This document shows positions 40,924 through 50,670 of a stretch of 64,000 nt of DNA, one piece after another (the stretch's first letter is position 1; every line of letters begins with the position of its first letter). Source of the DNA: Fonticula alba ATCC 38817 (taxonomy: Eukaryota; Protista; Nucleariida); the NCBI GenBank assembly GCA_000388065.2, contig KB932206.1; one strand, written 5' to 3'. The notes beneath the pieces are model-generated. The model had not been told where the DNA came from, did not search any database, and was given only the letters and a program-made list of their open reading frames with translations. Position numbers and translations under genes: made by a program.

Positions 40924-42402
40924 ATGTCCATCCACCTCCGCGGCGACCCCCGGGTGTATACCGTCCTCTTGCGGGCCCGGTCAATGCGGGAAAGCAAGCA
41001 CCTGAAGGCCAATGAATTTGAGAACGCCGGGAAAGGTGCGCCCCCTGTCCCGGCCATGGTGACTGATTAATTGCCCGGCATGCCCCCTTACCCGACCTGC
41101 CCACTCGTCGGCGCCTCGGTCTAGTCATCCTGCCGAGCCTGGTTCTGCAAGAGCTGTCCCACCATCTGGTCACCTACCCGATGGTTTTCTCCTTCTCCTA
41201 TGGCGATCGAATCACCCATGGGGGTGTGGCCGACTTCGACCAGTGCCCAGGCAACGTGTACTTCCCCTCCTGGGTTCGTGCCGCCCAATGTCCTTCGGGC
41301 CATTGCTTGCCGAAGTCCACATCTGCGCGCCTCCTTCGTGCTGTGCCCGCCCCCTCCGCTCCTGCCGTGCTTTTGTTTGTGGCCACATGCGCGGCCACGC
41401 ATGGGCATGCAGCTGCGCATGCGCATCCCCTTGCTAACCCCTCTGGCCCCGGCCTCTCCTCCTCCCCCAACCGCCAGATGATGGACCAGCTGGGCATCAC
41501 GTCCGGTGACAATGTCGTCGTTCGCAATGTCAACCTCCCCCTGGGCAACTTTGTGCGGCTACAGCCGCTGACCGAGGACTTCCTGCAAATCCACAACCAT
41601 CGAGCCACTCTGGAGCATGGCCTCGTCCAGTATGGCGCCCTGACCAAGGGCGATGTCATCACCATCCCCTACGGCGACGATCGGGTGTACAGACTCCGGG
41701 TGCTGGACACCAAGCCGGCCCCGGCCATCGCCATCACTGAGACCGATCTCGAGGTGGACTTCGCCCCGCCGGCCGATGTGGAAGCTCGTGAGCGGGCTGA
41801 GGCCGAGCGCCGCGAAGCCGAGGCGGCCCGCCAGGAGCGCGAACGCCAGGCCCTGGAGGCCGCGCGCCTGGCCGCCGCCACGGCCGAAGCTCGCCGGGTC
41901 AACTTCGTTCCCTTCTCCGGGTCCGGGACGCGCGTGCGCTCCGGCACGGCCGGGCCTTCGGGCTCTCGATCGGGCCATGACCCGGCCCTTGAGGCGGTGC
42001 GCATCGCCCACTGGCGCCCGCTGTCCTCCTCTTCGCGCGCTTTCCCCCCCCCCCCCCACACACACACACCACGCCTTGCCCAATGTCTGACCCCCTTCAT
42101 CGCAGATCCTTGCCGAGGCTGCTGCCCAGAAGCCCGTCGTCCGGCCCTTCCTCCATGGCGTCAACCCGGCCGCCGTGGTCCCGCTGGACCTGGGCCCGGT
42201 CGGTGCCATTGTCATCGGGTCACCGCAGCGGCTGGCCGACCCCGAGCAGCTGAAGGCCGCCAGCCAGGGGCTCCTTTCCTCCGGGGCTTCCTCTTCGGAC
42301 ACAGCCCTGCCCGGCGGGGCGCCAATCTTCTCCGGGACCAGTGCCACACTCAAGAAGAAGAAGCGCTCGAAAAAGGCCAAGTCCAGTGTCGACGCGCCAT
42401 AG
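40924..42402 (+). CDS. UFD1: Ubiquitin fusion degradation protein 1 (Cdc48/p97 adaptor)
   Basis: Spliced GK|VILPS..TYPMVF..THGGVADF..VYFPSW|MM, then LQPLTEDFLQIHNHRATLE..LTKGDVITI..VLDTKP..IAITETDLEVDFAPP, and a SHP box FVPFSGSGTRV. Confidence 0.9.
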
Positions 42403-42884
42403 ATCGAGCGCGTCGCCGGCCTAGCCCGGCCCTGCCTCTTCCCGGGAGCTCCCCCCCCCTCGCTTCTGCCCCCCTTCCCCCCCCCCTCTCCCTGTCCCTC
42501 TGTCCCAAGCTTTTGGGTGCGATCCTGGTTGTCGATTTGCGAATTTGAAAACCTGCACTCTTTCCTTACGTGTCCCTGCTTCTGTGCCTTTGTGTGCAGG
42601 TGAGTCTATTCCTGCGAAGTCGGCCCCAAAGGGAGGTGATGGGGAGGGGAGGAGGGAGGGGAGGGAGCGGGCGAACAGGGGGCAGGACAATGCGAGGCCG
42701 GGGGAGGAATGCGCCCACCGGAGGGCGGGGCGCAAGTAGCCCGACACTTGCCGCCTGTGCGTGCGCGCGTGGGCACACGAAAGACACACAGACACACACA
42801 CACATCCATGTATGAATATATAAATATATATCTGTGTGCACATGTGTGATAGGGCGGCACGCGTGGATGTGCATGGGCCCATAA

Positions 42885-44507
42885 TCAGAACAGCGAGTCC
42901 ATCGACACCGTGGCCTGAACGGGGAAGGTGATGTGGCTGCCACCACTGCCATCGGCACTTTGCGCGCTCAGGCGCATGGGCAAAATACTGCGAAAACATG
43001 CGCACACACACACACACATAGGCCCGGATGCCCAGAAGGCAGGGCGGGAGAACACAAATAGACACAGGGGCGAGAGTGTGAACAGTGTCAGCGCAAAGTC
43101 CAGCGAACAGGTGAAGGGACAGGGGGAAGGGAAAGCAAGGGGCAGCGCCCGGCACAGGCACGCACCGGAAGGCAAACACCCCCTCGATCAGACGGCCGTC
43201 GACCACCAAATCGAAAGGACGCCCGTTGGCCGTCTCCACCGTGGCATTGCTCACATGGAAGGAGTGCCCCTCCTCGGCCTGATCGGTCAGCCAGCCAGCC
43301 GTCGACTGCCGAAGCGATGCCCCCACCACCGGGGCCAAGCTGTCGGCCAGATCCCGCGGCAGAGGGCTGGTACCCCCGCCGGGGGTGCCGGAATCGGCCG
43401 ACTGACCCGAGGCCGGGAGCGCCGCGGCGCCCGGGCCCACGGGCACTCCGGCCGGCGAGGAAAGGAGATTCGAATCGAGCACGACCGCCTGCGATGATGA
43501 CAAGTCCAACAGCTGGGGGAAGGCCAGCGGGGCAGGGGCCGGCTGGAGTTGAGACACCGCCAGAGCCGTGGCCTGGGTGACCTTGTTGCGCGAGCGACGA
43601 GACTGCGCATGTCCCAAAGCCGGGAGGGGGAAAGAAAAAAAAGGAAAAGCCAAAGGCCGAACGAGGGCAATCAGCCTGTCAGCAGAGCGAAGCCCCTCCT
43701 CCCTCGCCAAGTGAGATGCTTTTCAGCCGGGATCCAGCAAGGCGCCACAGCGATGGCTCACGCACCGGGTCCGCCTCGAACATGTACAGCTCCACACAAT
43801 CGGAGAAAGGGTGCACCAGGTGCCCATGATCGGCTGTCCGGGGCAAACTGCTGACCTGGACCGAGTGGTACGACCGAGAAGGAAGGGTCCGGCGCATTCC
43901 AAAGCCACCGCCCACCGAGAGGTCCGTGTAGGAGATGGCCAGCTCCGGCGCCGTGTGCTTCAGCTGCCGGATAACCGAGGCAGAGGGGCCGGACCCGGAG
44001 CTGGACCCGGACCCGGAGCCTGCCCCGGAGCCTGCCCCGGCCCCGGCCCCGGCCCCGGCCCCGGTAGCCGAGAGGGCGCTCGTGGCCCCGGCCCCGGTGG
44101 CCGAGGAAATGCGTGCCCGACGCAAGCGCGACACGGACAAACCACCGGCACAAAGGCTGGCCGCCGGCTGAGTGAAGTTTGTCGTGACAAATGCCCCAAA
44201 GGCGGTGGTCAGCTGGCCGAGCACCGCCGGCGAGGTGGTCTGGGCCGGGCGCTCGGCCCCGGCCAGCGATCCGTCACCCCCGGCGAAGGCGCCGGGGTCG
44301 CTGCCCGGCATGCCCAGCGACGAGGTCACCTCCGAGGCGAAGGCCACCGCCGTCGACACATGGCTGCCCACCTCGACCGATCCCATGAAGGGGATGACCA
44401 CGCCGCCGGAGAAGTCCTCCTTGCTGTCGCGTGCCTTCTGCCAGTACTGCACTTGGAAGACCTTCCACTGTCACAGGTCCAACAACAGCAACAGCAACAG
44501 CAACAGC

Positions 44508-44541
<34 letters not shown>

Positions 44542-45209
44542 GGCCGTATGGGCGGTGAGAAGGGGGGGGAGGGGGGGGCGGAGGCATGGATCAAGAAGAC
44601 AAGGATGAACGAGGCACACGCACATGCATCGTGGAGGTGGCTGTCCGGAAGTGCTGGTCCAGCAGGGACCGGGTATAGGCAATCGGCGACATGACCGCAT
44701 TGCGCGACGCGTCAAAGTAGCCACCCTGGCCGTGTGCAAGCCAGTCGGCAAGAGGAAGGAGGAGAAGCAGGAGGAGGAGAAAAGCAAGGAACACCGTCAG
44801 AGGGGGGGCGGGGGGCGGGGGAAAGAGAGGCAAGGGAAGGGGGGCAGGACCCAGCAGAAAAGCATGCCCATGGGGGAGGGTTGCCAAGGGGGAGGCAGAG
44901 CCGGGGCTCGTACCATGTCCGTGACGGCATTCAAGGACCGCAGTGACAAGACCGCATCAAGGTCGCCGATGAGGTCCGACCGGCCATGGCGACTGCATAC
45001 CTCCGGATCGTCAACCGCCGGCAGGACCGAGAGGGCCGACCGAAGGGGGTGCAAAAGGTATCGCCCATAGAAGGGATCATACAGGGAGATGGCATGGGCG
45101 AACTTCAAGGACCGGCCAATCGGCACGATGTAGAAGACGGGGGCTGCGTGTCCGGCGCGGGGAGGGAAACCGGGAATGAGCAACGCGTGATATGGAGGGC
45201 GGAGGGAAC

Positions 45210-45259
<50 letters not shown>

Positions 45260-47761
45260 GGGGTGACACGGGGAGTGAGGCACGCACCGACACGCGCCAG
45301 CAGATCCGGCCGGGCCACATGCAGGCGAGCGTATGCCAGCAGCACGGCCTGCACCATGGAATCGCCGCCAGCGATGGCCACACGCACGCGGAACACACTG
45401 CGAGCCGGGGCCTCGCCGGGGGCGGTGGAGTTTGAAGCACCGCCGGTGGTGCCACCGGTGGCGGGGGTGCCGGAAGAGGCCCCGGCACTCGAAGCACCGG
45501 CAGCATTGGCCGCCGAGGGCTTGGCCGTCGATTGCAGCGACGTGGCGTTGGCAGCCGCCGCATCTGGCAGGTGCCGCTCGAGGATCCGCTCCAGCGCCGA
45601 GTATGCTCCGGAAGTGGCCATCTGTGAACCCTCGGCCGAGGGCGAGGGCACCGAGGCCGGCCCGAAGCCGGGCTTCCCGCCAATCGGCGTGAAGGCCCCG
45701 GGCTCCACCTCGTGCAGCTCAAGTGTATGGTAGCTGCAGTGGACGCAGGAGGGGACGAATCAGCGAGAAGACGGACCAGGGAGGAGAGGGAGAGGGGGGA
45801 GGGGGGGGGGAGTGGGACACAGAGGAGCAAGTCAGCAGGGGGCAGTGGCAACCATGGCCACGCATAAGTGCACAAATGGGCCGATGGGCGGAACATACTC
45901 GGAGAAGCAGGAAAGCAGACTATCCAGGTCGATGTCGGCATAGTCGTCCTCCGTCTCGCCCGGAACCAGGGCCGGCCGGGTGGCCAAGATCTTCTGGTAC
46001 AACACATCAAAGAGCCGGGTGATCTTCTCGCCATTGTACTCGGGGGCCGCATGGGACCGGGCCCCGCGACCGGATGTCGGCGATCCGGGGGTCCCGGACC
46101 CGACCCCGGACCCGGCGGCGCTGGCCGATGGCGGCGCGAAGGTCGCCACGATCTGCGTCGCCGCACTGAAGTAGGCATTGACGTGGGCCGGGCTGTACCG
46201 ATCCAGCCGGGGACATGTCTCCACACCGAGGATGGTCCGGAAGCAGACTGGAAAAGGGAGCGGGGGAGGCCCAGCGGGTGGCGTCAGAGGGGCGGGAGGG
46301 GGGGGGGGGGGGNNNNNNNNNNAGAGAGAGAGAGAGAGAGATTGATGGAGAGACAGGGAAGAAGGGAGCGGCAGGCAAATGAGGAGGGGAAGAGATACAC
46401 GCACCACACGTGCGATCGACACGTAGAGCTCGCCATCAGAGGCGGTGGAAGATGTGCTGGTGTTGATTGGGTCTACGTTGGTGGTTGGAGCGCTGGGCGG
46501 CTGCTCGCCGCCGACGCGGGTGGCCTGAGTGGTAACAGCGGCGGCGCTCGAACTCATGGCCGGGAGCATCACACGGGACGAAGCAAGCCGAGAAGGGGGG
46601 GGAAGAAGAAGGGGGCGATCGAGGGCGAGGGCGGTGCGGGGGGGGGGGCACCAGACCTGATGCTGGGCAGGGGGCAGGGCGGCGCAAGACCGGCGGCCGA
46701 CGCACGATAGAGGAAGTACAGCCGCGGCTCCGGGTCGAAGGGGATCTGCCGCGCGGCCAGGTAGAAGCGCAGCACATGCGCAGAAGCTGACCCGGGCGCG
46801 GTCAGCACATGGACCGAACGCGAAGTGCGCGACGCAGGCAGCAATTCCGGATGCCGCTCAAGGAACTCGGCCGCTCGCCAGAGAAGTGGCTTGGCCAGCC
46901 GCCGCCGGCACATGCGGATCAGGCCCAAAGCCACAGTGCTGGCCGGCCGCGGGACCACCGTGAAGGGCCGCAGGTGGTCGCAAATGGCCCCGAGCAGAGC
47001 CGGCGGGAGGTGATCCGACTGCCCAAAAGAGAGAGAGAGAGAGAGAGAGGCAGCTCAGAAGGTCAGAGCTTGCAGCAGGGAGGGGGAGGGGAAAAACAGC
47101 AGCAGCCGAAAAGGAGAAGCCCGGCGCACCGCTTCGACACTCTCGCGCATGAGAAGCATCAGCAGGAAGGCATGCTCGTCGCTGGAGTCCACGCCCTGGG
47201 GCGAGGTGGAGCCGGCCGCGGCGCGGTCTTGCTCAATGGCCCGCAACCGCGTCAGCAGCTTCATGAAGGTCAGCAGCACCTCGCGCACGTGGATGTTCTT
47301 CATCAGGACCGAGCCCAGGGCGGTCTCTCCCACTGTGATGCGTTCGCGGGGGAGGAGAGGCGGGAGGGGATTAGCGCCGGAATGGGCATGCACCTGGAGG
47401 TAGGCATGTTGATGGGTGGGTGCAGAGGGCCCTTTGGCGCAACGCACTCAGTCGGCTCTCAAGGCCGGAGAGAGATGACAGGAAGCCACCGGTGTTGTAG
47501 CCGTCCGCCAGGGACAAGCGATACTCGTTGAAGGCCATCTGCCGGAGAGCCAAGTGCCGGAGGTGGGAGATGTGCTCGAAGAAGTCATTGGCAATCAGGA
47601 TGTTGCAGAACTACCCGGGGCAATGTGTCGCCCGGATTCAAGGGGTCAGCGAGTGTGTGCGCGTGGGTGTGCGTGTGGGCGTGCGTGGTGGTGGGAGGGG
47701 GGGGGAGGCAGACGAGTGATTGTGTGTGCATACGCATGCACATGCACAGATGTGATCCCCT

Positions 47762-47806
<45 letters not shown>

Positions 47807-49122
47807 CGAAACAAGTGGCGCACAGTGCGGCCCATGAAAGGATCAGTGTGTAGAGCTCCGGGTGACGGGCCGGAGGCGGACTCCGAGGACTGGAGCTCGT
47901 CGCGCCAGAGCCGCGCGGCCGTCAGGACACCGTGGTCACGTAGTGAGGAGCCATAGTTCAGGGTCACGAAGTAGAAAGTATGGATCAGGCGCTGGCGCAG
48001 GTGACGTATGGAAGGACAAGAAAGTGGGGTTAAGGCAGAACACCGGGGGAAGAGGGTGGCGGAGGACGACAGGGAGACCAGAGGAGGCAGAGGGAGGCAG
48101 AGGGAGGCAGAGGGAGGGAGGGAGGGAGACAGCTGGGCAAATGTAGGCCTAGCGTCGAGGGGAGAGGAGGGGCAGAAGCACAGGAAGGATATTAATCCAG
48201 GGCAGGTCATGCCGAGGGGGGGAGATGTAGTTCGATGTGCCGGGCAGGGCGTCCGGCGAACCGGGCATGTCGCCATTGATCGAGAAGGAGGTGACCGCCG
48301 AGGGAGCTCGCTCATTCATGATGAAGGCCACAAGCTGGCCGCGGATCCCAGAAGAGACAAATATCCGCCGGGGGGGAGGGGGGTGGAAGAAGGTAAATGA
48401 TGGGCCAAAGAGGGGGGGAAGAGAGGGGGCCGGTGAGAGGGGGCTGGCATACGTCGCTGGGGTCGCGCCAGGAGTCCGCCAGACCACCGAGGCTGATGAG
48501 TTTCGCCATCAAGGTGACCACCACCGCGGCAATTACCCCGCGATGGGCCACCATGGTGTCATAGAAGCTTTGGTGATGGTTGAAGGTCACAGGCTTCAGG
48601 TCGGGAGACAGGTGGCGCGCCAGCTGGATGTGGGCACACGGAGGCAGATGGCCGCGGAGGAATACAAGTGTCAGCAGTGCGAGTTGGGGAAGGGGACAGC
48701 GGGGACAGGGGAGACGCGGAGAGAGAGAGAGAGAGAGGGAGAGAGAGAGAGGAGGGAGAGGGAGGGACAGCGGGGACATAGGAGACGCGGAGAGAGAGAG
48801 AGAGAGAGGGAGAGAGAGAGAGGAGGGAGAGGGAGGGACAGCGGGGACATAGGAGACGCGGAGAGAAAGAGAAAGAGAGAGAGAGAGAGAGAGATTGATG
48901 GAGAGACAGGGAAGAAGGGAGCGGCAGGCAAATGAGGAGGGGAAGAGATACACGCACCACACGTGCGATCGACACGTAGAGCTCGCCATCAGAGGCGGTG
49001 GAAGATGTGCTGGTGTTGATTGGGTCTACGTTGGTGGTTGGAGCGCTGGGCGGCTGCTCGCCGCCGACGCGGGTGGCCTGAGTGGTAACAGCGGCGGCGC
49101 TCGAACTCATGGCCGGGAGCAT
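42885..49122 (-). CDS. p101/p84 (PIK3R5/6)- and PACS-C-terminal-like protein, multi-exon
   Basis: N-terminal helical exons (SFYDTMVAHRGVIAAVVVTLMAKL; LIHTFYFVTL; spliced LYFLY-LCFRTILG..LDRYSPAHVNAYFSAA), then RVRVAIAGGDSMVQAVLLAY, VFYIVPIG..AISLYDPFY, VIPFMGSVEVG, LAISYT, YHSVQVSSLP, ANGRPFDLVVDG and terminal HITFPV. The order matches recalled p101 and PACS C-terminal motifs. Confidence 0.6.
44480..44540 (+). repeat. (CAA)n/(CAACAG)n microsatellite in an intron
   Basis: aacaacagcaacagc...caacaacaac is directly visible. Confidence 0.9.
46323..46638. repeat. 316-bp direct duplicate of 48876-49191, flanking the N-gap at 46313-46322
   Basis: Appears base-for-base identical by eye; offset 2553 bp. 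Confidence 0.9.
48695..48880 (+). repeat. ~71-bp tandem repeat (~2.5 copies), GA-rich, intronic
   Basis: The unit gggacagcggggacataggagacgcggagagag... recurs. Confidence 0.85.
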
Positions 49123-50670
49123 CACACGGGACGAAGCAAGCCGAGAAGGGGGGGGAAGAAGAAGGGGGCGATCGAGGGCGAGGGCGGTGCGTGTGTATGC
49201 GTGTGTATGTGGGGGGGGGAGGGGCAAGGAGAAGAGACGTTGTCGGCCGGCGTCAGGGGCGGATAGTTGCCAGGCTGCAGATCAGTCAGTCTACTTGTCG
49301 CACATTGGCCGGAGCGCCGGCGGCACCAACGCGCGTCAGGCCAAGGCGCAAGCTGTGAGGGTGGGGGAGAGAACAATCGCACCTCCTCGCACACGAATTC
49401 GCCCACACGCACGCGTGCGCGCACATGCTCCTCCCCACACACACGCACACACTCGTCCCGATGGTTGGCCACGATCCGAGCCGTACACCAGCCGCGAGGA
49501 GCCGTCGCCCCATTGCGGCCCGCCGCATGTGTTTCGGAGGTGAGCCTGCCATGCCGAGACCATCAGCGCGGCCTGATCCCCCTCCCCGCGGCCCGCAATA
49601 ACAAACGGCGAAGGGCGCGGCCCGTTCGGAATCCGGACCGCCGCAGGGGGGGGGGGGGCCGGATCGCCCAGGTCGAGGCACTCTTGAGAGTGGGGACCTG
49701 CCGGGGCCTGGGTTCGCCGCCCTGACCCATCCCCTTTTTGTGTTCCCCCCCCCCCCCCGCCCGGCCGCCCCGTTCACGCCCCGCCCCGGCTTCTCCCTTT
49801 GACCGGACACCGGCAGGGGGGAGGGGGAGAACGCGCCTTCCCCGCTCCCAACAGCACGGGGGCCCGGGAGGGCATTTTCCGAGCCACCCCGCTTGTTGTT
49901 ATTTTCACGAGTGCTGGCCGGCCGGCCGGCCCGGATGTGTCCGATGCCCGACCCCCGGTGGGGCCTCCAGGGGCGCGCGGCTTTCGGCGGACCTGCCCAG
50001 CAGCCTCCACCGGCGACACCTCATGCCCACCAGGCACATTCTCCCGCCGGAAGAGGAAGATGCCCAGGGGAAAGGCCCCCCCCCCCCCCCCCGCCCGCTG
50101 CCGCCGGGTGCGTCCGCCTCGGGCCGAGAGCACGCCGCCAAGCATGCGATTGCAAACGTGAGTGTGTTATTTCCCAGCAATGCGCGCACGTAGGGCCCCG
50201 CCGGCCTTCGGTCGGTCTCGCCTGCGCTCTTGCCGCCAGCCCAGTGTCGCCGCGCCCCCTGCCGAGCCCCGTCCGGCGGCGCCTCGCACGCTGGCATGCC
50301 TCCGTTGGGACGCGGATGCGGTGGAATTTCTCCTCTGGAATGTTATTATTTGTGATCACGGGCACCTCGGAGAAACCCACAACTCCGGATCGTGGGCTAT
50401 GCATTGGCCCTCTGGATCGGGCCCCCGGCCCGTAACTCGAGCGTGGTCGACACAGTGGCAGAGGTGGCCGGAGGTGGCCGGGGGTGGCCGGGGGTGGCCG
50501 GAGGTGGCCGGGGCCCGGCCGGGGCCCGGCCGGGGAGGGGTGCCGTCTACCAGACCGGGGGCCGGAGCGCGGGACAATCCGGCCGCGGCCCAGGCCCCCT
50601 TGGCTGTTTGCGCCATTTTTATTCCCGCGACCTCGCGCGCACTGGCGGCTCCTCCAGCCGGCGTCCCACC

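What the first reader, a model, noticed from the sequence alone, without database searches (positions are those of the whole stretch)
42885..49122. Class IB PI3K adaptor (p101/p84)-like protein that also matches the PACS C-terminal domain
Seen: a helical N-region followed by RVRVAIAGG (~45390), VFYIVPIG..AISLYDPFY (~45140-45060), VIPFMGSVEVG (~44390), LAISY (~43940), YHSVQVSS (~43860), ANGRPFDLVVDG (~43230) and HITFPV. Recalled alignments: p101 RVVVFGSD / FFYVPV..LGMLDPWY / IFIHSLELG / LQIIY / GSNSCPFAVCLD / LCLPI, and PACS VKVAVAG / FLVIPLG / FIPFVGVVKVG / FRSLQVSRLP / VLIDG / HFPI. Known: p101/p84 are generally described as metazoan/vertebrate G-beta-gamma adaptors of PI3K-gamma. Inference: an ancestral p101/PACS-fold protein, possibly linking GPCR signalling to PI3K in an amoeboid protist, and evidence that the two families share a fold.
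Basis: inference. Interest (0 to 1): 0.75.

Follow-up and report, generated by a model that had tools for sequence, protein, structure and literature searches.

The report
Pre-animal p101/p84-type PI3K adaptor
This gene of the amoeboid protist Fonticula alba encodes a very divergent relative of p101/p84, the G-protein-sensing partner subunits of PI3K-gamma that were thought to be a vertebrate invention, and its rear half has the dead-lipid-kinase fold that the PACS sorting proteins also appear to share.

Summary
On the minus strand, 49122-42885 holds one 14-exon gene of 1235 codons. Spliced transcript contigs from four public runs confirm most junctions. It is the public protein H696_03782 of Fonticula alba, annotated "hypothetical", with no Pfam domain.

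The assembly gap (46313-46322) and a 300-nt exact repeat beside it lie inside intron 7. Transcripts join 46706 to 46247 in frame, so the gap does not touch the coding sequence.

Alone, the protein matches nothing, either exon by exon or at full length. With its few relatives (Capsaspora CAOG_08646, an unnamed protist, three metagenome lineages) the picture is clear:
- A family profile hits only p101 (3e-17) and p84 (7e-15) in the PDB. Without Capsaspora it still does (1.7e-5, 6e-4).
- The Capsaspora member passes Pfam's p101 threshold (74.8 bits).
- The AlphaFold model of the Fonticula protein matches only p84/p101 significantly in Foldseek, then YegS, NAD-kinase and sphingosine-kinase folds.

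The PACS link is weaker but real at fold level. Sequence matches are sub-threshold and limited to about 60 residues around the GGD motif. A relative's C-terminal model aligns equally well to PIK3R5, PACS2 and PACS1 models (TM 0.58-0.60).

Verdict: a new, deep-branching member of the p101/p84 family. Its role as a PI3K adaptor is inferred, not shown.

The parts
42885..49122 (-). Whole coding region, start codon to stop codon: 14 exons, 3708 nt, 1235 codons. It is H696_03782 of Fonticula alba.
48958..49122 (-). Exon 1 (residues 1-55): Ser/Thr-rich and disordered, then the first helix.
   Evidence: The joint from the exon 1 end to 48623 appears as a 'goes back' joint onto the repeat copy at 46405 in X1 and X2. 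Start phase 0.
47130..48623 (-). Exons 2-6 (48623-48453, 48334-48193, 48005-47824, 47610-47448, 47332-47130; residues 56-342): N-terminal helical region. The first ~200 residues are conserved among the protist relatives but have no counterpart in p101.
   Evidence: Joints. Alignment A1/A5. The model is helical here.
48006..48192 (-). Intron 3: AT-AC, U12-type. Donor ATATCCTT, CCTTAAC box at 48035-48029.
   Evidence: The joint 48193->48005 with ends AT..AC is seen in X1, X3 and X4. Sequence read.
46706..47018 (-). Exon 7 (residues 343-447): the best-conserved helical stretch (LLMLLMRE...PF.V.P.P), equivalent to the p101 solenoid, plus strand VHVLTAPGS, a relic of the kinase NPxSG loop.
   Evidence: Profile alignment to p101 residues 54-150. 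Pfam p101 positions 72-260 in Capsaspora and 97-161 in L007 and L002. pLDDT 70-92.
46248..46705 (-). Intron 7. It contains the assembly gap 46313-46322 and repeat copy 46323-46622. Its true length is unknown.
   Evidence: Joint 46706->46247 in X1, X2 and X3. Repeat.
45899..46247 (-). Exon 8 (residues 448-563): helices plus a low-complexity linker.
45288..45733 (-). Exon 9 (residues 564-712): a disordered Ala/Ser/Gly linker, then strand RVRVAIAGGDS (678-688), the relic of the lipid-kinase GGDG motif. The linker sits where p101 has its unresolved 311-512 linker.
   Evidence: pLDDT 87-91.
44914..45143 (-). Exon 10 (residues 713-788): FYIVPIGRSLKFA...YDPFYGR, the relic of the PxGTGNDxA motif and equivalent to p101 FFYVPV...LDPWY.
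43766..44725 (-). Exons 11-12 (44725-44624, 44467-43766; residues 789-1056): first strands of the beta-sandwich (IPFMGSVEVG, PELAISY, YHSVQVSSLPR), interrupted by a ~120-residue Gly/Ala/Ser low-complexity insert.
42885..43602 (-). Exons 13-14 (43602-43166, 42987-42885; residues 1057-1235): a disordered linker, then the last beta-sandwich strands (FHVSNATVE, RPFDLVVDG, HITFPVQ), equivalent to p101 CPFAVCLD...LCLPIMTF.
   Evidence: pLDDT 81-94.

Best explanation
The gene encodes a deep-branching, highly diverged member of the p101/p84 (PIK3R5/PIK3R6) family. The architecture has three parts. An N-terminal helical solenoid comes first. It is followed by an alpha/beta domain that is a degenerate diacylglycerol-kinase-type catalytic domain, keeping GGD and P-x-G...F-A relics but lacking the glycine-rich ATP loop. 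A C-terminal beta-sandwich closes the protein. Long disordered low-complexity linkers are inserted between these parts, one of them (before the GGD strand) where p101 has its unresolved 311-512 linker.

Shown here: the gene structure, its transcription and splicing, homology to p101/p84, and the fold.

Inferred by analogy with p101: the protein has no lipid-kinase activity. The solenoid plus alpha/beta part would hold the single class I PI3K catalytic subunit that has been reported for Nucleariidae. The beta-sandwich would touch the membrane and G-beta-gamma, recruiting and orienting the kinase after receptor activation.

The C-terminal region of PACS proteins appears to be another non-catalytic offshoot of the same lipid-kinase fold.
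For: Gene and expression:
- Spliced contigs of four runs confirm the 14 exons and the in-frame join across the gap.
- The protein is identical to public P0001.

Family membership:
- BLASTP of P0001 against P0002 gives 7e-32, collinear over ~800 residues; against Capsaspora P0006, 1e-15.
- An HMM of the relatives without P0001 finds it at 1e-101 in four collinear pieces.

Link to p101/p84:
- Capsaspora P0006 scores 74.8 bits on PF10486 (cut-off 23).
- Profile A1 against the PDB hits only p101 (3e-17) and p84 (7e-15), with four collinear stretches.
- A profile without Capsaspora still hits only p101 (1.7e-5) and p84 (6e-4) below E 0.1.
- 7 of 19 family rows hit PF10486.
- The Atlas feature neighbours are p101, PIK3R5 and PIK3R6.

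Structure:
- Foldseek with the P0001 model finds p84 at 1e-8 and p101 at 4e-6 to 3e-4; the next hit is at 0.11.
- The domain model of P0002 (pLDDT 72, pTM 0.74) finds p84 at 3e-15 (TM 0.51), p101 at 1e-13, then SphK1, YegS and DgkB.
- This matches the published description of p101 (PMC8397274).

Possible partner: one class I catalytic sequence is reported in Nucleariidae (PMC4617754).
Against: - P0001 on its own has no hit to PF10486 at E<=1, and no p101 hit by phmmer against the PDB. The link is transitive, through few relatives.
- The full-length model is poor overall (mean pLDDT 50.7, pTM 0.35). TM-scores to p101/p84 are 0.1-0.2 with rmsd near 17-20 A, so only the local elements and their order are supported.
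- The compact domain model is of a relative with 29% identity, not of the Fonticula protein itself.
- The beta-sandwich aligns weakly to the p101 G-beta-gamma-binding domain (6.7 bits). Conservation of binding residues for p110 or G-beta-gamma was not tested.
- No Fonticula PI3K catalytic, G-beta or G-gamma sequence was examined here.
- The protist proteins carry ~200 extra N-terminal residues that p101 lacks.
Confidence: 0.82

Rival explanations
1. It is an orthologue or ancestral form of PACS sorting adaptors, using its C-terminal region as PACS1/2 do.
For: - Pacs-1 (PF10254) is the only named non-repeat Pfam hit of P0001 itself (E 0.069, residues 678-739).
- 5 of 19 family rows hit Pacs-1, the best at 4.4e-4.
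- The PACS C-terminal cluster is the fourth Atlas feature neighbour (0.84).
- The domain model aligns to PACS2 and PACS1 models at TM 0.60 and 0.58 over 307-314 residues.
Against: - All Pacs-1 hits are below the 25-bit cut-off and cover only profile positions 70-135.
- There is no hit to the PACS C2 domain (PF25332). The N-terminal 560 residues are helical and align to the p101 solenoid.
- Sequence-level matches to p101 are stronger and fall in several separate regions.
- The fold match to an archaeal YegS-type kinase is equally good (TM 0.55/0.66), so the fold match does not single out PACS.
Confidence: 0.05
2. It is an active lipid kinase of the diacylglycerol, sphingosine or ceramide kinase type with an N-terminal helical extension, not an adaptor.
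For: - DAGK_cat (PF00781) is hit by three family rows (best 5.5e-4) on the GGD segment.
- The aspartate of GGD is kept in every member.
- P0002, L007, L002 and L005 keep P-x-G-x-x-N-x-F/L-A, and L002 keeps NPxS on strand 1.
- YegS, SphK1, DgkB and NAD kinase are the next structural matches.
Against: - In P0001 the glycine-rich ATP loop is absent (TAPGSAS) and the Asn of the second motif is Leu.
- All DAGK_cat hits are below threshold and cover under half of the domain.
- p84 and p101 beat the kinases by about six orders of magnitude in Foldseek E-value.
- p101, the closest solved relative, is reported to lack the catalytic residues (PMC8397274).
Confidence: 0.08
3. It is a p101-fold scaffold that does not work with PI3K at all: a lineage-specific protein with some other partner.
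For: - Identity to p101 is very low.
- The protist proteins carry an extra ~200-residue N-terminal region and huge disordered inserts.
- No interface residue was tested.
- PACS shows that this fold can serve unrelated adaptor roles.
Against: - The region best conserved between the protist family and p101 is the solenoid, part of the region p101 uses to bind p110-gamma.
- The named members come from lineages reported to have class I PI3K: Fonticula (Nucleariidae) per PMC4617754. The same is assumed for Capsaspora from general knowledge and was not checked here.
Confidence: 0.25

Closest known systems
p101 (PIK3R5), regulatory subunit of PI3K-gamma (PDB 7MEZ_B, 8SO9_B)
   Same: - The order of parts is collinear: helical solenoid, degenerate lipid-kinase alpha/beta domain, beta-sandwich.
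- The motifs are shared: R-V-x-V-x-G-x-D, F-[FY]-x-V-P, DPWY, [LV]E[LV]G and L-P-[IV]-x-T-F at the C-terminus.
- There is a long disordered linker directly before the GGD-equivalent strand.
- It is the only significant PDB family by profile and by Foldseek.
   Different: - Pairwise similarity is undetectable.
- The Fonticula protein is 1235 aa, against 880 for p101.
- It has ~200 extra N-terminal residues and different low-complexity inserts.
- The P-x-G...F-A and GGD relics are closer to active kinases.
- There is no insert between the VPIG and DPFY motifs, where p101 has an unresolved 560-603 linker.
- Binding of p110 or G-beta-gamma is untested.
p84/p87 (PIK3R6) (PDB 8AJ8_B)
   Different: The same differences as for p101 apply. 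The data do not say whether the protist family is closer to p101 or to p84; it probably predates their split.
Capsaspora owczarzaki CAOG_08646 (P0006)
   Same: It is the nearest named relative: collinear, BLASTP 1e-15, with the same motifs. It passes the Pfam p101 threshold and so bridges Fonticula to the vertebrate family.
   Different: It has GTD instead of GGD, an insert in the P-x-G motif, and a stronger p101-like N-terminal region. It is annotated only as a hypothetical protein.
PACS1/PACS2 C-terminal region (Pfam Pacs-1, PF10254)
   Same: The predicted two-domain fold is the same (TM 0.58-0.60, ~310 residues aligned). There is sub-threshold sequence similarity around the GGD strand. The span from ~80 residues before GGD to the C-terminus is of similar length (about 430 against 413 profile positions).
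   Different: PACS has an N-terminal C2-type cargo-binding domain and a disordered middle region instead of a helical solenoid. No Pacs-1 hit reaches the cut-off. The function of the PACS C-terminal region is unknown (PMC13022394; bioRxiv 10.1101/2025.11.05.686565).
DAGK/YegS/sphingosine-kinase/NAD-kinase fold (DAGK_cat + YegS_C)
   Different: The ATP-binding glycine loop is lost and other catalytic motifs are degenerate. A large N-terminal solenoid and disordered inserts have been added.

Membership tests
p101/p84 (PI3K_1B_p101, PF10486) | The protein itself scores above the Pfam gathering cut-off (23 bits). | tested here: not met
   P0001 has no PF10486 hit at E<=1, whole or exon by exon. 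Its relative P0006 scores 74.8 bits. P0002 scores 19 bits, and pieces of L002 and L007 score 17-20 bits.
p101/p84 (PI3K_1B_p101, PF10486) | Significant, specific and collinear profile-level similarity to solved PIK3R5/PIK3R6. | tested here: met
   Profile A1 gives p101 3e-17 and p84 7e-15, with no other PDB hit at E<=10. Without Capsaspora it gives 1.7e-5 and 6e-4, with the next hit at 0.59.
p101/p84 (PI3K_1B_p101, PF10486) | Architecture of helical solenoid, then alpha/beta domain, then beta-sandwich, with disordered linkers. | tested here: met
   Secondary structure and confident islands of the model. VIA alignment of model 253-1175 to p84 48-716. Domain model of the relative. Compared with PMC8397274.
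p101/p84 (PI3K_1B_p101, PF10486) | Forms a heterodimer with a class IB-type p110 catalytic subunit through the C2 domain and its flanking linkers. | not testable with these tools
   No Fonticula catalytic sequence was available. The literature reports one class I sequence in Nucleariidae.
p101/p84 (PI3K_1B_p101, PF10486) | The beta-sandwich binds G-beta-gamma and membrane. | not tested
   The alignment to the p101 G-beta-gamma-binding domain is too weak (6.7 bits) to map contact residues.
PACS (Pacs-1 PF10254 + C2_PACS_N PF25332) | The C-terminal region scores above the Pacs-1 cut-off (25 bits). | tested here: not met
   P0001 scores 12.6 bits (E 0.069). The best family row scores 19.8 bits. 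Only profile positions 70-135 are covered.
PACS (Pacs-1 PF10254 + C2_PACS_N PF25332) | An N-terminal C2-type furin-binding region. | tested here: not met
   No C2_PACS_N hit. The N-terminal 560 residues are predicted helical.
PACS (Pacs-1 PF10254 + C2_PACS_N PF25332) | Same fold as the PACS C-terminal region. | tested here: met
   TM 0.60 to PACS2 and 0.58 to PACS1, by query, with 307-314 residues aligned at rmsd 4.3. Both sides are predicted models, and the query is the relative P0002:425-859.
Active DAGK-type lipid kinases (DAGK_cat PF00781) | Intact NPxSG ATP loop, GGDG and PxGTGNDxA motifs. | tested here: not met
   P0001 has TAPGSAS, AGGDS and PIGRSLKFA. DAGK_cat hits in relatives stay below the cut-off (best 20 bits against 23.6). 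The motif definitions come from general knowledge of the family.

The most novel reading that the evidence does not exclude
The p101/p84 adaptor is not a vertebrate invention. It would date back at least to the common ancestor of animals and fungi, because it occurs in Fonticula on the fungal side and Capsaspora on the animal side. It would have arisen from a diacylglycerol-kinase-type enzyme that lost catalysis, alongside the class I PI3K catalytic subunit it serves. In Fonticula it would couple G-beta-gamma to PIP3 production during amoeboid movement or aggregation. The enigmatic C-terminal region of PACS proteins would be a sister pseudo-kinase module of the same origin.
Probability: 0.4. 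Interest if true: 0.75.

Novelty: new member of a known kind. Interest (0 to 1): 0.62.

Why it matters
The one dedicated study of PI3K subunit evolution found here (PMC4617754) concluded that p101 and p87 arose in vertebrates, while the class IB catalytic subunit goes back to the opisthokont ancestor. It left open how that kinase is regulated in other lineages. A p101-type protein in a nucleariid and in a filasterean offers a concrete candidate for that missing regulator, and it makes the question testable in culturable protists.

The protist members also keep clearer relics of the lipid-kinase motifs than vertebrate p101 does. That documents the path from enzyme to adaptor.

As a by-product, the PACS C-terminal region, still described in 2025-2026 papers as having unknown structure and function, is predicted to have the same dead-kinase fold. 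This gives PACS1/PACS2 syndrome research a structural hypothesis.

One limit applies. Pfam already tags the Capsaspora protein, so part of this is visible in databases, although no paper in the searched library mentions it.

Tried and rejected
- Pfam exon by exon (14 pieces) found nothing relevant.
- phmmer of exons 9, 10 and 12 and of the whole protein against the PDB gave only Gly/Ser-linker and chance hits.
- An Atlas feature search with exon 12 gave no usable hit.
- Three word-index protein searches (alignment A1, P0002 C-terminal half, P0006 420-1143) returned only the queries. The first and third were capped at the 8000 candidates sharing most words, probably swamped by low-complexity words.
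A closer 4-row alignment then gave four metagenome loci.
- Two-gene model (exon 1 copy at 46569-46405 starting a second gene): rejected. Transcripts join exon 7 to exon 8 across it, and exon 1 is spliced to exon 2.
- My first guesses for the exon 7 donor (46657 or 46652), the exon 3 donor (GT at 48181) and the exon 4 acceptor (47991) were wrong. The transcripts corrected them.
- Searches of this scan's earlier notes for PI3K or p101 in this genome gave nothing useful.
- Literature searches for p101 outside vertebrates, or for a lipid-kinase fold in PACS, found no paper.
- I did not type or join the exons into a protein. The identical public sequence P0001 came back from the representative search and was used by reference.
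Full report
**Gene structure and the gap**

The region is GC-rich, and the long open frames lie on the minus strand, separated by CT- or GT-rich spacers. I derived a 14-exon model from splice signals and phases. I then laid the contigs of four small public runs (X1-X4, two samples, one study) on 42880-48875.

These runs are labelled only as "RNA?", but their contigs skip every predicted intron with GT..AG ends, so they are transcript assemblies. They confirmed eleven of my junctions and corrected three:
- Exon 7 ends at 46706 (donor GTGCGT), not further downstream.
- Exon 3 ends at 48193.
- Exon 4 starts at 48005.

The exons are 49122-48958, 48623-48453, 48334-48193, 48005-47824, 47610-47448, 47332-47130, 47018-46706, 46247-45899, 45733-45288, 45143-44914, 44725-44624, 44467-43766, 43602-43166 and 42987-42885. 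They sum to 3708 nt, or 1235 codons.

The assembly gap (46313-46322) lies inside intron 7. Directly beside it, 46323-46622 is a 100% identical copy of 48876-49175, the stretch that carries exon 1. Three runs join 46706 to 46247, and the frame is kept, so the gap does not affect the protein.

Exon 1 is spliced to exon 2. In one search this shows as a joint that "goes back" from 48623 to 46405, because only the second repeat copy was in the stretch I laid. Whether the intronic copy is real or a scaffolding artefact cannot be told from RNA contigs.

**Identity of the protein**

Pfam, exon by exon, found nothing. A full HMMER search of 1.84 billion representatives with exon 12 returned six proteins. 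The best is a 1235-aa protein (P0001) that is letter for letter my spliced model. It is named "hypothetical protein H696_03782 [Fonticula alba]" and has no precomputed Pfam domain. From there on I used P0001 by reference and did not join exons myself.

The other hits were:
- P0006, Capsaspora owczarzaki CAOG_08646.
- P0002, an 859-aa protein from an unnamed run.
- Two short fragments.

Contig look-ups and one metagenome scan added three more environmental lineages: L001-3, L004-6 and L007.

P0001 aligns collinearly with P0002 (7e-32, about 800 residues) and with P0006 (1e-15). An HMM built from the relatives without P0001 recovers it at 1e-101 (the columns came from an alignment that had included it). 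The family is sparse: three word-index searches found only the queries.

**Relation to p101/p84**

Several independent lines agree:
- The Capsaspora member passes Pfam's PI3K_1B_p101 threshold (74.8 bits, E 4e-21). P0002 is just below it at 19 bits.
- Seven of 19 family rows hit that model in two separate regions, profile positions about 97-161 and 487-546.
- A profile of P0001+P0002+P0006 searched against all PDB sequences finds only p101 (3e-17) and p84 (7e-15), in four collinear stretches.
- Without Capsaspora the profile still finds only p101 (1.7e-5) and p84 (6e-4) below E 0.1.
- Language-model features of the C-terminal half of P0002 are nearest to p101, PIK3R5 and PIK3R6 clusters (0.86-0.89).

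P0001 alone detects none of this. That explains its annotation.

**Structure**

AlphaFold2 on P0001:36-1235, with a 19-row alignment, gave a model with poor global confidence (mean pLDDT 50.7, pTM 0.35). It does have confident islands in the conserved segments.
- Foldseek against the PDB found eight matches at E<=0.001, all p84 or p101 chains (1e-8 to 3e-4). The next hit is at 0.11, and TM-scores are low.

A compact model of the relative P0002:425-859 was better (pLDDT 72.3, pTM 0.74). It gave p84 at 3e-15 (TM 0.51) and p101 at 1e-13, then SphK1 at 6e-9, YegS, acylglycerol kinase, DgkB and NAD kinase.

**Relation to PACS**

By sequence the link is weak. Pacs-1 hits occur in P0001 (E 0.069), P0006 (0.0016), L007 (4.4e-4) and L002 (0.014). 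All are below the cut-off, and all fall on the same ~60 residues around the GGD strand. That segment also matches p101 (profile 487-546) and DAGK_cat (profile 56-102).

By shape the link is good. The P0002 domain model aligns to ESM Atlas models of the following:

| Atlas model | TM by query | Residues aligned |
|---|---|---|
| PIK3R5 | 0.59 | 300 |
| PACS2 | 0.60 | 314 |
| PACS1 | 0.58 | 307 |
| Archaeal YegS-type lipid kinase | 0.55 (0.66 by target) | 291 |
| Eukaryotic DGK | 0.53 | 284 |

The fold is the known DAGK/YegS/NAD-kinase fold.

The window's protein is not a PACS. It has no C2-type N-terminal domain, and its helical N-terminal half aligns to the p101 solenoid. Recent PACS papers still call the C-terminal region structurally and functionally undefined (bioRxiv 10.1101/2025.11.05.686565; PMC13022394). 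I found no paper that links it to lipid kinases or to p101.

**Enzyme or adaptor**

The family keeps the aspartate of GGD. In several members it also keeps P-x-G-x-x-N-x-F-A, and in one member NPxS on the first strand. These are relics of the lipid-kinase motifs as I know them from the DAGK and SphK families.

In P0001 the ATP loop is TAPGSAS and the second motif is PIGRSLKFA. Loss of catalysis is therefore likely but untested. I give an active-kinase reading about 8%.

**Function**

Nothing here shows a partner. The inference rests on three points:
- Homology to p101/p84.
- The solenoid, part of p101's p110-binding domain, being the most conserved part shared with p101.
- The report of one class I catalytic PI3K in Nucleariidae, for which that study's database held a single proteome (PMC4617754).

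[quoted passage not shown] This family is a candidate answer. I put the homology at about 0.8-0.85 and the PI3K-adaptor function at about 0.5.

**Limits**
- The alignments are shallow, with six or seven lineages, several of them in pieces.
- The full-length model is poor.
- The good domain model is of a relative, not of the Fonticula protein.
- No PACS or p101 sequence could be aligned directly.
- The taxonomic range is unknown, because the one full database search used a single divergent exon.

Noticed in passing
window 48006-48192 (minus strand): Intron 3 of the gene is an AT-AC, U12-type intron. It has the donor ATATCCTT, a CCTTAAC branch-site-like box at 48035-48029, and AC at 48007-48006. 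The splice is confirmed in contigs of three runs, so Fonticula alba appears to use the minor spliceosome.
   Followed up: partly
window 46323-46622 and 48876-49175: A 300-nt, 100% identical direct repeat carries the end of the 5' leader, exon 1 and the start of intron 1. The second copy sits in intron 7, directly against the assembly gap 46313-46322. This is probably a scaffolding or gap-filling artefact, but only RNA contigs were available, so it is unresolved.
   Followed up: partly
window 44083 (exon 12): Contigs of runs X2 and X3 carry a 12-nt in-frame insertion (GGCCCCGGCCCC on the + strand) that X1 and the assembly lack. It is a length variation of the Gly-Ala repeat in the low-complexity insert.
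   Followed up: no
L001 3812-6221; L002 1-1897; L005 482-1975; L007 195-2425; P0002: Environmental and unnamed protist relatives of the family keep clearer relics of the lipid-kinase catalytic motifs than Fonticula, Capsaspora or vertebrate p101: GGD, P-x-G-x-x-N-x-F-A, and NPxS in L002. Their taxonomy is unknown.
   Followed up: partly
model of P0002:425-859 against the ESM Atlas: The PACS1 and PACS2 C-terminal regions, described in current papers as having unknown structure and function, are predicted to have the DAGK/YegS two-domain lipid-kinase fold (TM 0.58-0.60 to the family model). The same region of the model matches an archaeal YegS-type kinase at 0.55/0.66.
   Followed up: partly
window 41181-42548 (+ strand): The neighbouring convergent gene is a UFD1 homologue (UFD1_N2 1.7e-26, UFD1_N1 weak). 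The long ORF probably reads through an intron or into the 3' region.
   Followed up: partly
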